The notes beneath the pieces were generated by a model, which searched no databases, was not told the origin of the DNA, and was given only the letters and a program-made list of their open reading frames with translations. Made by a program: the position numbers and the translations under genes. Below, piece after piece: positions 5,341-28,438 of a stretch of 64,000 nucleotides of DNA (the stretch's first letter is position 1; each line of letters starts with the position of its first letter). This DNA is from Tubulanus polymorphus (taxonomy: Eukaryota > Animalia > Nemertea): contig NC_134032.1 of the NCBI RefSeq assembly GCF_964204645.1, forward strand, positions 1,116,001 to 1,180,000, in the 5' to 3' direction.

Positions 5341-5623
5341 ATGAAGAAACAGAATGTCCGTACCTTATCTTTAATCGTTTGTACTTTCACGTACCTGTTG
5401 GTCGGGGCGGCTGTATTCGACGCTTTGGAGTCCGAACACGAGGTCGAACAGACCCAACAGTTGCTGCGAGAGGAGATGAGTTTTCGCCGCAAATACAACA
5501 TAACGCCTGAAGACTACGCGGATATCACCAGGAACGTTATCAGGAATAAACCGTACAAAGCCGGAATACAGTGGAAATTCGCCGGAGCTTTTTACTTCGC
5601 CACGACCGTCATCACAACTATAG
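5341..5623 (+). CDS. KCNK3/KCNK9-like: First coding exon (1a) of TASK-type two-pore-domain K+ channel: N-terminus, TM1, cap, pore helix 1, to TIG
   Basis: Encodes [32 protein letters not shown]...[23 protein letters not shown], the TASK/sup-9 N-terminal signature. 283 nt (94 codons + 1), ending ACT ATA G|GTAGGG, the same phase-1 intron position as vertebrate TASK genes. The ORF read-through beyond 5623 is intronic. Confidence 0.97.
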
Positions 5624-5770
5624 GTAGGGCGCCAGTTTTACTTCTATCACATATTATATCCGCTCGTTGCCTTCGTCGGAAGCCTTTTTTGGATATATAT
5701 TATATTTTGTGAGCGAGTAGCTCAAACTATCTGTCACGATTGGTAGAACACTATATCCGTGTTGACGCGA

Positions 5771-6368
5771 TGAGGAGAGAATCCCACAATGATAATAAAA
5801 AGTCCGAAAATGAAACTTCGAGATAGTAGTTTATTTCAACGTTTCGACTATATCCTAATAGTCATCTTCAGGAATACTGTATTCCTTGAGCTAGTGTAGT
5901 TTATTCAACGTTTCGACTATATCCTAATAGTCATCTTCAGGAATACTGTATTCCTTGAGCTAGTGTAGTTTATTCAACGTTTCCACTATATCCTAATAGT
6001 CATCTTCAGGAATACTGTATTCCTTGAGCTAGTATTGTTTATTTCAACGTTTCGACTATATCCTAATAGTCATCTTCAGGAATAATGAGATACTACAGAA
6101 ATTATGAGATATATATACAATCCAGAGACAAAGAGACTAATTCAAGTAATCAGAGATGATACAAACTAAAGGAAAATTAACGTAGAAACAGTTACACGCT
6201 GAAATAGATTAAAGGGAAGCAAACTAAGGGGTGATTATAAACAACAATAGTGAGTATAAATATAAATGAAACTTAAAGTCAGTAGTAAAAAGAAAGACAA
6301 ACTAGGGGGCACTTAAATTAAAACACTTAAATTAAACTTTTTATTATGATTGTGGGATTCTCTCCTCA
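5771..6368 (-). mobile_element. Penelope-like non-autonomous element with inverted termini and an internal hammerhead array
   Basis: 33-bp inverted ends (5771-5803 / 6336-6368, 1 mismatch) enclosing four tandem CTGAAGA...GAAACGT motifs on the minus strand. Confidence 0.7.
5832..6084 (-). ncRNA. Four tandem minimal type-I hammerhead ribozyme motifs (about 69-bp period)
   Basis: Minus-strand unit: TATTC-CTGAAGA-T-GACTAT(TAGGAT)ATAGTC-GAA-ACGT-T-GAATA. Copies at 5832-5876, 5902-5945, 5971-6014 (stem II point mutation) and 6040-6084. Confidence 0.72.
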
Positions 6369-6959
6369 AACTATATCGCGGAATTATTATGTTGCCTGCT
6401 TGTGTCGTATTCTATCGTGATGTAACTGAGTCGCTGAGTGCGAGGTGTTAGTGCGCACTATACTACTACTAATATATTATTAAAACATTACAATTCATTG
6501 CTGATAGGTCCCGACACGCTGGCGATCCAGATTTTGAATTGAATCTAGGACGCTGAGAGCGGTTACCTAGCAATGAACACCGATCAGAAAAGTCAATATT
6601 ATATGTTTTTATTCGGGGCTTCGGATGGAACAGAATTTTGCGAGCTAAGCAACAAGCTCGAAGATCCAATACAGGTTCTCAATTCATGAACGCGTCTATA
6701 TGCCTACGATAGTATACGCCGATAGGAGCTTTATACCGACTTCGGGAAAGGTTTATCGGGCGTTTACTGGGTTTTATTAATCTACAGCCCACCCCCCCCC
6801 CCCACTCTCCTTTACTGAGCATTCATCCGAATTATGATCGTCCAGACTTCCCGTATTCGGGGCTACACCGAAATCTTGAATTGCAAATGTCCAGGGCTAC
6901 CACCCGAGATATTTTACGTACAGATGAAACTTAGTCAAATAGCGAGCTTCAGACGGTTA

Positions 6960-7218
6960 AATAAGATAAAATCCCACTATTTACAGATTAAAAGAATTTA
7001 AAAACCAGAATTTATTTATTAAATCTAAAATATTTAAAAGACGTCATCGTCAGGTGTGACGATCTGACGATGATCTCTAGGGTGAGATCGAAACGTCGTG
7101 TCTTTTAAATATTTTAGATTTGATAAATAAATTCTGGTTTTTAAATTCTTTTAATCTGTAAATAGTGGGATTTTATCTTATTATCCGTTCACCACGTTTG
7201 AGTGTGGTCATCGTTCTA
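6960..7218 (+). mobile_element. Penelope-like palindromic end fragment with hammerhead core (family 2)
   Basis: About 82-bp inverted arms around CTGACGA-T-GATCTC..GAGATC-GAAACGTC (7064-7097); flanking GACGGTT duplication; homologous to 46207-46489. Confidence 0.7.
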
Positions 7219-25029: not shown

Positions 25030-25057
25030 GCCCTATATAGGGCGCAGGTGCACCTGC
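25030..25057. promoter_or_regulatory. CArG box plus inverted E-box pair upstream of exon 1b
   Basis: GCCCTATATAGGGC (CC[A/T]6GG at 25032-25041) directly followed by GCAGGTGCACCTGC (CAGGTG + CACCTG), at the start of a CpG-rich, repeat-poor stretch. Confidence 0.45.
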
Positions 25058-28000
25058 CTTTCATCGGCGCGCTGTATTCCGTACATAATCACATTGGAGT
25101 AGTAGTACAGAGCGAGAGAACTAGAGAGAACTAGAGAGAGAGAGAGACGTATAGCGCTATAGAGTAACAGCTGGGTGCTCTGAAAACCGAATCATACATT
25201 ATGCATATATAAATATACCTTATAAATGTGTATTATGTACCAATAACGGAGGTACGGAGAGAATAGAGGGAGAGAGAGCGAGCGAAGACTAGACTAAACC
25301 ACTCCGCTAGCTCTCTTGCGCTGAAAACACAACATATGCTGAACGCATTCGTGCACTTAATGAAATATATACTATACAATCGACGTGCGTTTATTGACTA
25401 TATATATATATATATATACTTTTATCGGTGGATTATTCTCCGGATTCGAACCGCGACTCGATGTGACTCTGTGTACCGCGAAAATCCACGGAATCGCGGA
25501 ATCGCGGAAAAAACCGAAACTGCGCAAGACGGCAGCGACCAGGCACGGCCTATACAGTTTAGTATATATTCGGGGATTAGTTGACGTCGGATTAAAGATA
25601 TATATGCGGGCCCGTATCGCGCCATTTATATATATATATGTATGTATGTATTAAAAACAGTGTTTGTTTTATCGTCGTAATTAGCACGACAGCGGAGCGA
25701 TAGAGCCGCGGCAATTAAGAGATATTCAGCGCGATAGTTTTTGAATATCATCATTCCCATCATCGTCATTATCATCATCGCCGCCGCAGTTGCGGATAAT
25801 GCGCTGGTTTATCGTTTCGTTTCGCATGCGCTTAAATTAGGCCTATTCGCGCTGACACAAACAAACAAACGGTTCGCGTGTGAATGAACGGCGACCTGTT
25901 CGGTATATAAAGCAGCCGGTTTAGTTTAATGGCAGGGCCGTATTCGCCCGCATCTGACTGATTATTACGAATACGCTTGACCACGGCGTTTAGAACGGGT
26001 CAGACTCGTACGCGGCGCCGAGTAACGCGTCGTATTTTCGTCGGAACATATTTTTTTTCCTCGATAATTAAAGCGATATATGCGATATTGAAATGCGGCC
26101 CTGGCGTAACACACTGCATTGTTAACGCGCGCGCGTGGATATATGTAAGCAAGTACTCCTGCGCCGTGCTGCTTCAATTAGCATAGATTTGAGAATCCGT
26201 TTGTTCTACCGGATACACACGCATCGAAAATCGTGCTTTTTTCGTCGGTTCTTTCACGGAATATTTGTCAGTTTATAAACTATGGCGGATCGTAGGCGAC
26301 TATTGCGCAATCGCCAGTGATAGCGCCGGTGAAAACGATGTAAAAAAGCCGGATCGGCAAACAGCGAAATTTCAGCGGAAGCGGCCCGGACAGGTCCGTT
26401 TCGCGACCACTGCTACCGCGCCCGATACATAACGGAGGAATCATTTCATTCGGGAATCGAATAAGAGATGATTCATAAGCGTACGATATAACCGTGGAAT
26501 CCGTGTGAATCTAGCCGTAAACATGGATTGAAATATCGAATTATACGTCGTTTGGTTATTATAGGTAAATAGAGAGAGAGAGAGAGAGAGAGATATTTTA
26601 CGGAGAGCCGGGGTTAAGCGTAAAATCCATCTATATAAATGAAATACAATGAAACTGCCGGTTTGTTGGCGCTGAATCGACGGCGGGTTTCAGCTGCTTT
26701 CTAGATTCGTCCGTGTGGCTGCTGCTTTTTTACATTTGTTGCCGATTCGCTTCCCCTCACACGCACAGCTGCAGGAAATATTCATATATTTATATATATA
26801 TATATATATACATATACAAACTTTAATTCTTTGTTTTTGAAAATATAGACGCGCTCTCAAACGATATAGGACGTGAACGTTATCGGGAGATTTTTTTAGA
26901 ACGCGTTAAACGTTTCTGAGAAAAGCGTCGATCGTTTGCTTTTTACGTAATTTCGGACGCGTTCGGGTTGCGTCGCGTGAATCGTAACGTCGATCCCGTA
27001 TCAGGGCTGACGAACGCCGACGTAAAAATCGATCAGCGTCTTAACGTTTTATCGCCGTGTATCGACGCCGTCTCCGAGTGCGGCGGGTGACGTCATTTTT
27101 GCACCGGCTATAAGCGTCTCGCAGTTTCCGCTTCCGCGAAAACAATACCTAAACGTTAATCTACGCATAATAAAGCGTATTATTGTACGTTACGGCGCGC
27201 GCAGCGTTTTGTTCGTCAGTGTAATAAAAGCGTTAACGTTCCGCGTCTGTGTACGCGTATTAAACGCTGTATCATCAGGCCGGCGTTACGAATGATATAC
27301 GTGGCGTTAAAGGGCAGACGCAGCGTGCGCGTACTTCAACGCTGAAGCGTTCGATTATTATCATCATTTTTTTTAAGCGTTCGAAGCGTTGTGATGCCGA
27401 TGTAGAGCCGGTTCAGTTTAATACGCGTTAACTATGTATCGAGTGGCGGCTGTGAAATGCGTGCAACAAGTCGTGAGATACGATGACACTGCTGTAACAG
27501 TCACCTAGCGAGACGCCATGTAGCCGTCGCTGCATTAGAAATAAAATCCCGATGAGTTAATCAATCGCAATTAGTTACGTAGTTAGCTTAGAAATAATTA
27601 TCATTTAACTGTTAATCGAATTTTTAATTGGTTAATTAATTATTAATTGATTATTTTATTTTTACCGTAGTTTTATTGTTAAGTAGTGTATAAGCTTGAT
27701 TATCAAAATTTGATTCAGATCAAAATTTTCTAATTTTTGTTGTTGTTGTATTTTTCAATTCGATCGAAGAATAGAAAGCACGGGGCGCTAGGCGCTACTG
27801 ATCGGCGCAGATTCAGAATTTAAAATCAAAATATTTCTAGCCGGGGACTAGCGTTTGTCTTAAGCTAATGAAGTTGACAGGGAGATAAGAAAATAACGCG
27901 TGTTCAATAAAATTGAAGATTGTTGAAATATTGAAGTCAGACGTAGAAGGAAAATAAGTTGGAGATCAAAAACCTGACAATTCTTTATCCGATAAAGACT

Positions 28001-28155
28001 TGGATGAATCGACTTATCGAAAGTCGAACGTTAGCTAAAACAGAATCGGAATTTCGCACTTTTTGAAGAAAAATATCGCGATTTAGAAAAAAAAGGTTAC
28101 GGCGTCGAGAAGCTGGATGAAAGAGCCGATTGATAATTGGAATAAGACTTAAGCC

Positions 28156-28438
28156 ATGAAGCGACAAAATGTCCGTACCTTATCTTTAATCGTTTGTACG
28201 TTCACGTACCTGTTGGTCGGGGCGGCTGTATTCGACGCTTTGGAGTCCGAACACGAGCGGGAAACTTTGCATAAGTTGACCACCGAAGAAAAGGATATGA
28301 GAAACAAGTACAACATCAGCGAAGCGGACTACGAGAAAATCACCGAAAACGTTTTGTTGAGCAAGGCGCCTAAAGCCGGAATACAGTGGAAATTCGCCGG
28401 CGCTTTTTATTTTTCACTCACCGTTATCACAACTATAG
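28156..28438 (+). CDS. KCNK3/KCNK9-like: Second copy of the first coding exon (1b) of TASK-type K2P channel
   Basis: Encodes [32 protein letters not shown]...[23 protein letters not shown]. 283 nt, context GCCATGA, ends ACT ATA G|GTAAAT, no indels or stops. 69/94 aa identical to exon 1a by my count. Confidence 0.97.

What the first reader, a model, noticed from the sequence alone, without database searches (positions are those of the whole stretch)
5341..28438. Two tandem first exons of a TASK K2P channel with no second exon between them: a variable-cap / constant-body locus?
Seen: two intact, equal-length (283 nt) ATG-containing exons 22.8 kb apart on the same strand, each with a GT donor at the conserved TIG|YG intron. 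My scan found no acceptor followed by GN-TAY-GGN-CAY in 5624-28155 or 28439-64000, and no provided ORF contains TM2-TM4 sequence. Known: TASK genes have one such first exon spliced to an exon starting (G)YGH, and K2P channels are dimers whose cap is built from this segment. Inference: both exons splice alternatively to shared downstream exons beyond the window, as variable first exons do in UGT1A or clustered protocadherins. That would give two subunits that differ only in cap and pore helix 1, and up to three dimer types from one gene. Alternatives are same-strand nested or interleaved paralogues, or an orphaned exon 1a. I know of no described K2P gene built this way.
Basis: partly seen in the sequence, partly recalled or inferred. 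Interest (0 to 1): 0.9.

Follow-up and report, generated by a model that had tools for sequence, protein, structure and literature searches.

The report
Potassium channel with two swappable caps
In the ribbon worm Tubulanus polymorphus, one TASK-type leak potassium channel gene has two duplicated start exons feeding one shared second exon, so it can make two subunits that differ only in the outer cap and first pore helix; the design is familiar from other gene families and already sits in the public annotation, but I found no description of it for this channel family.

Summary
Confirmed. Two intact 283-nt TASK first exons (5341-5623, 28156-28438) have no body exon between them. The window is 100% identical to T. 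polymorphus OZ123233.1. One body exon starts 5.8 kb past the window (position 69809), with no second body in the following 10 kb. RefSeq already lists both products (XP_074656401.1 = 1b + body; XP_074656402.1 = 1a + body): 362 aa, identical after residue 94, 25 differences. The 1b-to-exon-2 junction appears in a spliced contig, and 1a's 5' UTR is in the same contig. A direct 1a junction was seen only in a divergent sample with the same species label. That one conspecific contig is a 1a/1b chimera, probably an assembly-graph artefact. M1 is homogenised (dS 0.11) while the cap is near saturation (dS 1.8), suggesting gene conversion. Residue 88 (Thr/Leu) is a known pH-gating site in human TASK. 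Other animals checked have one first exon. It works like UGT1A, GCNT2 or protocadherin variable first exons, and I found no paper describing it for K2P. The scan had not noted this elsewhere; it lists other duplicated channel exons in this genome.

The parts
5032..5340 (+). Transcribed 5' leader of exon 1a (minimum extent; the true start site is unknown)
   Evidence: run X2 contig 9 begins at 5032; X2 has zero depth at 4700-5023 and at 5636-5707
5341..5623 (+). Exon 1a coding part (residues 1-94: M1, cap, pore helix 1 with A87/T88); start of RefSeq isoform X2, XP_074656402.1
5353..5442 (+). Homogenised M1 tract of 1a (identical runs of 32 and 57 nt shared with 1b)
5443..5556 (+). Variable cap segment of 1a (residues 35-72), 53% nucleotide identity to 1b
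5624..5629 (+). Splice donor of exon 1a (GTAGGG); intron to the shared exon is 64,185 nt
28156..28438 (+). Exon 1b coding part (residues 1-94, with S87/L88); start of RefSeq isoform X1, XP_074656401.1; in-frame stop 6 nt before the ATG and no acceptor-like site in the 400 nt upstream
28168..28257 (+). Homogenised M1 tract of 1b
28258..28371 (+). Variable cap segment of 1b (residues 35-72)
28439..28444 (+). Splice donor of exon 1b (GTAAAT); intron to the shared exon is 41,370 nt; junction seen in a spliced contig
28439..64000 (+). Shared intron, running past the window end. The single constant exon (GYGH filter, M2-M4, stop) lies outside the window at L005 74469-75274, i.e. 69809-70614 in extended window numbering
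42484..42516 (+). Candidate recursive-splicing site (pyrimidine tract, CAG|GTAAGT) in the shared part of the intron
   Evidence: sequence only, use not shown
63950..63982 (+). Second candidate recursive-splicing site (CAG|GTAAGC)
   Evidence: sequence only, use not shown

Best explanation
One TASK (sup-9-like) K2P gene whose first coding exon was tandemly duplicated, now with two alternative first exons and one constant exon. Shown: the anatomy, the single body, both annotated isoforms, the 1b junction and transcription of 1a's leader. Inferred: each exon has its own promoter. A transcript from 1a reads through 1b, which has no upstream acceptor and is skipped, so the donor nearest the start is joined to exon 2, possibly in steps via the two recursive sites. 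The two 362-aa subunits share the filter GYGH, M2-M4 and the tail, and differ in the cap and at residues 87-88. Gene conversion keeps M1 alike while the cap diverges. Likely outcome (inferred, untested): cell-specific leak currents with different external pH sensitivity or blocker access and the same intracellular regulation, plus a/b heterodimers where both are expressed.
For: Single body exon in 85 kb. RefSeq X1 and X2 identical after residue 94. Spliced contig joins the 1b pore helix to the exact start of exon 2 and carries 1a's leader. A 1a-type exon is spliced to the orthologous body in run X4. Both frames intact, N53 sequon kept in both, dN < dS in every segment. In DNA run X1 each copy has depth 24-27, the shared tract 42 and the single-copy paralogue 30. 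Position 88 controls the filter gate and pH response of TASK-1/-3 (PMC3411076).
Against: No conspecific contig shows the 1a cap or the 1a donor joined to exon 2; the only conspecific spliced contig is a 1a/1b chimera. RefSeq XP models are predictions and I could not see their read support. No conservation in the other animals checked. Promoters were not mapped.
Confidence: 0.8

Rival explanations
1. Exon 1a's cap is not used. Only 1b's cap reaches mature mRNA, and 1a is an orphan or merely supplies a promoter, so the gene makes one channel type.
For: Run X2 has no depth over the 1a cap (5456-5527), and its spliced contig carries the 1b cap; X3 holds 1b and not 1a.
Against: 1a is the more ancestral-looking copy (T88, P71-Y72) with an intact frame and donor and dN < dS. 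RefSeq has isoform X2. A 1a-type exon is spliced in X4. Contigs drop minor paths, so absence proves nothing.
Confidence: 0.08
2. The chimeric contig is real. Either the animal also makes a hybrid mRNA (1a leader and M1 joined to the 1b cap through an internal GT at 5443 and an AG ending at 28257), or sample S2 carries a recombinant allele from crossing over or conversion in the 57-nt identical tract. This would be in addition to, or in place of, the plain two-exon model.
For: X2 contig 9 has 1a letters up to at least 5385, then a same-length diverged cap, a 1b-type pore helix and exon 2. The skipped part starts with GT and the join would be in frame.
Against: A 57-nt identical tract exceeds the 31-letter word size of the assembly, so a graph path can switch copies there. 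The donor (GTCGAA) and acceptor (GAG, no pyrimidine tract) are very poor. X3, the same sample, holds a normal 1b with its own upstream sequence. The protein would differ from 1b only at residue 3.
Confidence: 0.08
3. Interleaved paralogues: 1a splices to a second body exon lying more than 10 kb beyond the known one.
For: Only 10 kb past the gene end were fetched.
Against: No second body in L005. Only two TASK genes of this species were returned, and the other has its own exon 1. RefSeq joins 1a to this body.
Confidence: 0.02
4. Assembly artefact: two haplotypes of one exon placed in tandem.
For: M1 regions are 96% identical; the species looks polymorphic.
Against: Caps are 53% identical and the flanks do not align. 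Each copy has about the same depth as the single-copy paralogue rather than half. No N gaps in L005. A second sample has both a 1a leader and a 1b exon.
Confidence: 0.02

Closest known systems
Vertebrate variable-first-exon clusters: UGT1A, GCNT2, clustered protocadherins (PMC1885805)
   Same: Homologous, same-length, same-phase first exons in tandem, each spliced to common constant exon(s). The variable exon encodes the outward-facing specificity part. Gene conversion among variable exons is reported for protocadherins.
   Different: Only two variable exons and one constant exon, in an invertebrate ion channel. The exon boundary cuts the first pore domain just before the filter. No conservation found across species. 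Separate promoters not shown.
TASK-1/TASK-3 (KCNK3/KCNK9) and invertebrate sup-9/Task6 channels
   Same: Protein family, intron at TI|GYG, H98 and N53 positions. Vertebrate TASK-1 and TASK-3 form heterodimers (references in PMC8436263).
   Different: Vertebrates diversify TASK with whole paralogous genes; here the two subunits share everything after residue 94. The loci checked in other invertebrates have one first exon.
K2P genes with alternative 5' exons: C. elegans twk-40 a/b/c (PMC9049526); TREK-2 a/b/c (own knowledge)
   Same: Alternative first exons and promoters in a K2P gene.
   Different: Those exons add only short N-terminal extensions to a common channel region and are not duplicates. 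Here the exons are homologous and carry M1, cap and pore helix 1.
Protostome Cav3 exon 12a/12b turret splicing and NALCN pore exons (PMC4436565)
   Same: Alternative exons exchange an extracellular turret or pore segment of one channel gene, with measured effects on selectivity.
   Different: Those are internal alternative exons in four-domain channels and are widely conserved; this is a first-exon (promoter) choice in a dimeric K2P and appears lineage-restricted.

Membership tests
TASK subfamily K2P channel | Sequence homology to TASK-1/-3 over M1-cap-P1 | tested here: met
   ungapped match to residues 1-94, E 2.5e-36 (tested with 1b; 1a is 73% identical to it)
TASK subfamily K2P channel | Complete subunit with four TM helices, two pore loops (GYG, GFG) and His after the first filter | tested here: met
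   the model shows M1-E1, E2, P1, M2, M3, P2, M4 helices at modest confidence, pLDDT 61
TASK subfamily K2P channel | Acid-inhibited K+ leak current | not testable with these tools
   needs electrophysiology
Variable-first-exon / constant-exon gene (UGT1A, GCNT2, Pcdh type) | Two or more homologous first exons in tandem, same length and phase | tested here: met
   two exons of 283 nt, phase 1
Variable-first-exon / constant-exon gene (UGT1A, GCNT2, Pcdh type) | One common set of downstream constant exons | tested here: met
   one body exon in 85 kb (10 kb checked past the end)
Variable-first-exon / constant-exon gene (UGT1A, GCNT2, Pcdh type) | Each variable exon is spliced separately to the constant exon | tested here: inconclusive
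   1b junction seen (X2); 1a junction only in RefSeq X2 and as a 1a-type exon in divergent run X4
Variable-first-exon / constant-exon gene (UGT1A, GCNT2, Pcdh type) | Each variable exon has its own promoter | tested here: inconclusive
   Unrelated upstream sequences; 1a leader transcribed; 1b has no upstream acceptor-like site; contigs cannot show start sites
Variable-first-exon / constant-exon gene (UGT1A, GCNT2, Pcdh type) | Organisation conserved across species | tested here: inconclusive
   One first exon in the loci of Capitella, two Haliotis, Tegillarca, Crassostrea, Priapulus, an unnamed ENA assembly and the Lineus paralogue-type gene. No close relative's orthologous locus was available, and only 10 kb upstream was read.
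Tandem or nested whole-gene paralogues | One body exon per first exon | tested here: not met
Mutually exclusive internal exons (Cav3 12a/12b type) | Exons flanked by an acceptor and a shared upstream exon | tested here: not met
   Both carry the start ATG with in-frame stops upstream; 1b has no acceptor-like site within 400 nt. An unseen non-coding exon upstream of 1a is not excluded.

The most novel reading that the evidence does not exclude
The first K2P gene that diversifies its extracellular cap and filter-gate residue by promoter choice between duplicated exons, with gene conversion holding the domain-swapped M1 helix constant so that a/a, a/b and b/b dimers assemble and differ in pH or toxin sensitivity: a natural cap-swap experiment on an otherwise identical channel.
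Probability: 0.3. Interest if true: 0.62.

Novelty: new variant of a known kind. Interest (0 to 1): 0.42.

Why it matters
How K2P heterodimers assemble and whether they are domain-swapped through the cap are stated open questions (PMC8436263). This gene offers two naturally evolved subunits that are identical from the filter onward and differ in 22 cap residues and at residue 88, a site where I88G changes acid inhibition of human TASK-1 and TASK-3 (PMC3411076). Expressing them alone and together isolates the contribution of cap and pore helix 1 without artificial chimeras. It also extends the variable-first-exon design to an invertebrate ion channel. The weight is limited: two exons only, no conservation found, and the model is already in RefSeq as isoforms X1/X2.

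Tried and rejected
Exact look-up of the window ORFs in the protein collection was blank. The look-up of encoding contigs had no record for isoform X2; the locus came through X1. No run holding the 1b stretch is on record as RNA; X2 is judged RNA from its spliced junction. A tree of residues 35-94 from 36 TASKs did not resolve the origin of 1a and 1b (held together p-AU 0.38); 1b does not join the mollusc S-L-T group, so the duplication could not be dated. A run test for conversion on synonymous sites alone was not significant (p 0.085), while the M1 versus cap+P1 contrast was (Fisher p 0.025) and so was M1 against the paralogue comparison (p 2.5e-5). A 1a-to-1b tandem splice at the AG 2 nt before 1b's ATG would be in frame but has no pyrimidine tract; rejected. 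Rfam found nothing in the window. The Physella gene was too long to fetch. Five paper searches found no K2P gene with duplicated cap-encoding first exons; most subscription papers are not in the library.
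Full report
Observation. Exon 1b matches human TASK-3 residues 1-94 without gaps (E 2.5e-36). A profile made from 22 TASK bodies, tblastn and motif scans found no M2-M4 sequence in any frame of the window. The sequences around the two exons do not align; only the exons and dispersed repeats do.

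Source and whole gene. A profile search returned T. polymorphus 'sup-9-like isoform X2', XP_074656402.1, which starts exactly with exon 1a. Its cluster mate XP_074656401.1 (isoform X1) starts exactly with exon 1b. Both have 362 residues and are identical after residue 94. The locus fetched through X1 (L005, OZ123233.1:1111341-1196614) contains the window at 100% identity and has no gaps. It holds two first exons and exactly one body exon, at window-equivalent 69809-70614, behind a normal acceptor. The introns are 64,185 nt from 1a and 41,370 nt from 1b. The other TASK gene found in this species (XP_074656777.1) lies 12 Mb away with its own first exon.

Is it an artefact? In DNA run X1 the 1a contigs have depth 24-27, the contig with 1b's start 24, the tract shared by both 42, and the single-copy paralogue 30. 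Two alleles of one exon would each have about half the paralogue's depth. X1 may be the assembly's own sample, so this tests copy number and is not independent. A second sample (X2, X3) has 1a's leader and a 1b exon with allelic differences.

Transcript evidence. Run X2 has a spliced contig whose loose end is the exact start of exon 2, preceded by the 1b version of pore helix 1, so the 1b junction is seen. The same contig begins at 5032 in 1a's leader, has 1a letters up to at least 5385, and switches to a same-length diverged cap after the 57-nt tract that is identical in both exons. The simplest reading is a graph path that changes copy inside a repeat longer than the 31-letter word, which implies that both 1a's leader and 1b's cap were in the RNA. 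A real hybrid transcript or a recombinant allele cannot be excluded, but the internal donor and acceptor needed are very poor. The 1a cap is not covered in X2, so no conspecific 1a junction was seen. Run X4 (2015, same species label, only about 88% identical over the laid piece) has a 1a-type cap end spliced to the orthologous body. It probably represents another lineage: the one transcriptome paper I checked collected its animals in Washington State (PMC4986456), though I cannot tie X4 to it. Because 1a is the ancestral-looking copy, X4 does not show that this lineage has two exons.

How the exons differ. There are 25 amino-acid differences: K3R, 22 in residues 35-72 and A87S/T88L. In the model these fall on the second half of the long M1-E1 helix, the E2 helix, the following loop and pore helix 1 (pLDDT 61, used only for helix limits). 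Divergence is a mosaic: dS 0.11 and dN 0.02 in codons 1-34, dS 1.8 and dN 0.62 in the cap, dS 0.53 and dN 0.07 in codons 73-94. Synonymous sites in M1 are not generally constrained, since 17 of 31 differ against the paralogue versus 2 of 32 between 1a and 1b (Fisher p 2.5e-5). With unalignable flanks this points to an old duplication with recent gene conversion of M1. A plain run test was weaker (p 0.085) and cap codon counts are small, so conversion is likely, not proven. dN is below dS throughout, so there is no sign of positive selection, and both frames look maintained.

Mechanism. Shown: anatomy, single body, 1b junction, transcription of 1a's leader. Inferred: two promoters. Exon 1b has an in-frame stop just before its ATG and no acceptor-like site in 400 nt upstream, so a transcript from 1a should not recognise it as an internal exon and should join its own first donor to exon 2, as in UGT1A and GCNT2 (PMC1885805). 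Two sense-strand sites of the recursive-splicing type lie in the shared intron (42510, 63976), none antisense and none between the exons. The bare motif is not enriched, but both copies carry a pyrimidine tract that only 1% of YAG sites have. Their use is not shown. Functionally, the cap arches over the pore and enables M1 domain swapping (PMC8436263), and residue 88 is the pore-helix position at which I88G increases acid inhibition of TASK-1 and TASK-3 (PMC3411076). The numbering carries over directly. Thr in 1a against Leu in 1b predicts different filter-gate stability and pH response, with the His sensor, inner gate and tail shared. Heterodimers are plausible because M1 is conserved and vertebrate TASKs pair, but nothing here tests that.

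Distribution. TASK loci from Capitella, two Haliotis species, Tegillarca, Crassostrea, Priapulus, an unnamed ENA assembly and the Lineus paralogue-type gene each show one first exon in the gene range plus 10 kb. Among 178 full-length TASK proteins the Tubulanus pair has by far the largest gap between body identity (100%) and exon-1 identity (73%) among pairs with bodies at least 93% alike, though 90% clustering could hide such pairs. A tree of the cap could not date the duplication. The arrangement looks lineage-restricted; no close relative was available.

Comparison and verdict. It works like the variable-first-exon clusters and meets their anatomical criteria. Separate splicing of both exons and separate promoters are only partly shown, and conservation was not found. 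Known K2P alternative 5' exons, such as twk-40 a/b/c, only add N-terminal extensions (PMC9049526). The closest functional analogue is Cav3 exon 12a/12b turret splicing (PMC4436565). Five searches found no K2P gene with duplicated cap-encoding first exons. Verdict: real, a new variant of a known kind, already present as two RefSeq isoforms but apparently undescribed; interest 0.42.

Noticed in passing
window 42508-42515 and 63974-63981: The only two YAG|GTRAG motifs in the window are both on the gene's strand, both with 16-17 of 20 pyrimidines upstream (background 1%): candidate recursive splice sites in the long intron.
   Followed up: partly
window 5826-6084 (minus strand): 69-nt tandem repeat, 3.7 copies, whose antisense strand has a hammerhead-like core (CUGAAGA, stem, GAAA); folding z -2.25; no Rfam match. 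The adjacent 5726-5760 is a very high-copy repeat.
   Followed up: partly
window 28258-28287: Run X3 carries a 1b allele with 4 changes in 30 nt and three amino-acid changes (RETLHKLSID against [10 protein letters not shown]), so the cap may be polymorphic within the species.
   Followed up: no
window 5032-5625, run X2 contig 9: Chimeric contig: 1a leader and M1, then 1b cap and pore helix, then exon 2. Probably a graph artefact; unresolved.
   Followed up: partly
window 5167, 5213, 27868, 28004, 28117: Upstream ATGs in front of both exons; possible translational control.
   Followed up: no
L004 10001-20583: Second T. polymorphus TASK paralogue (XP_074656777.1) with TVIGYG in the first filter, shared with the Lineus gene, next to two fucosyltransferase-family genes.
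   Followed up: partly
L007, L008, L010, L015: Intron 1 of TASK is also very long (43-69 kb) in Haliotis, Tegillarca and Priapulus, and the Physella gene spans over 100 kb; many annotations list exon 1 as a separate 96-150 aa protein.
   Followed up: no
window 11787-12808, 18197-18687, 30524-31073, 54898-55513, 62080-63286: Long simple repeats account for the large low-complexity ORFs; the window has no other evident coding gene.
   Followed up: partly
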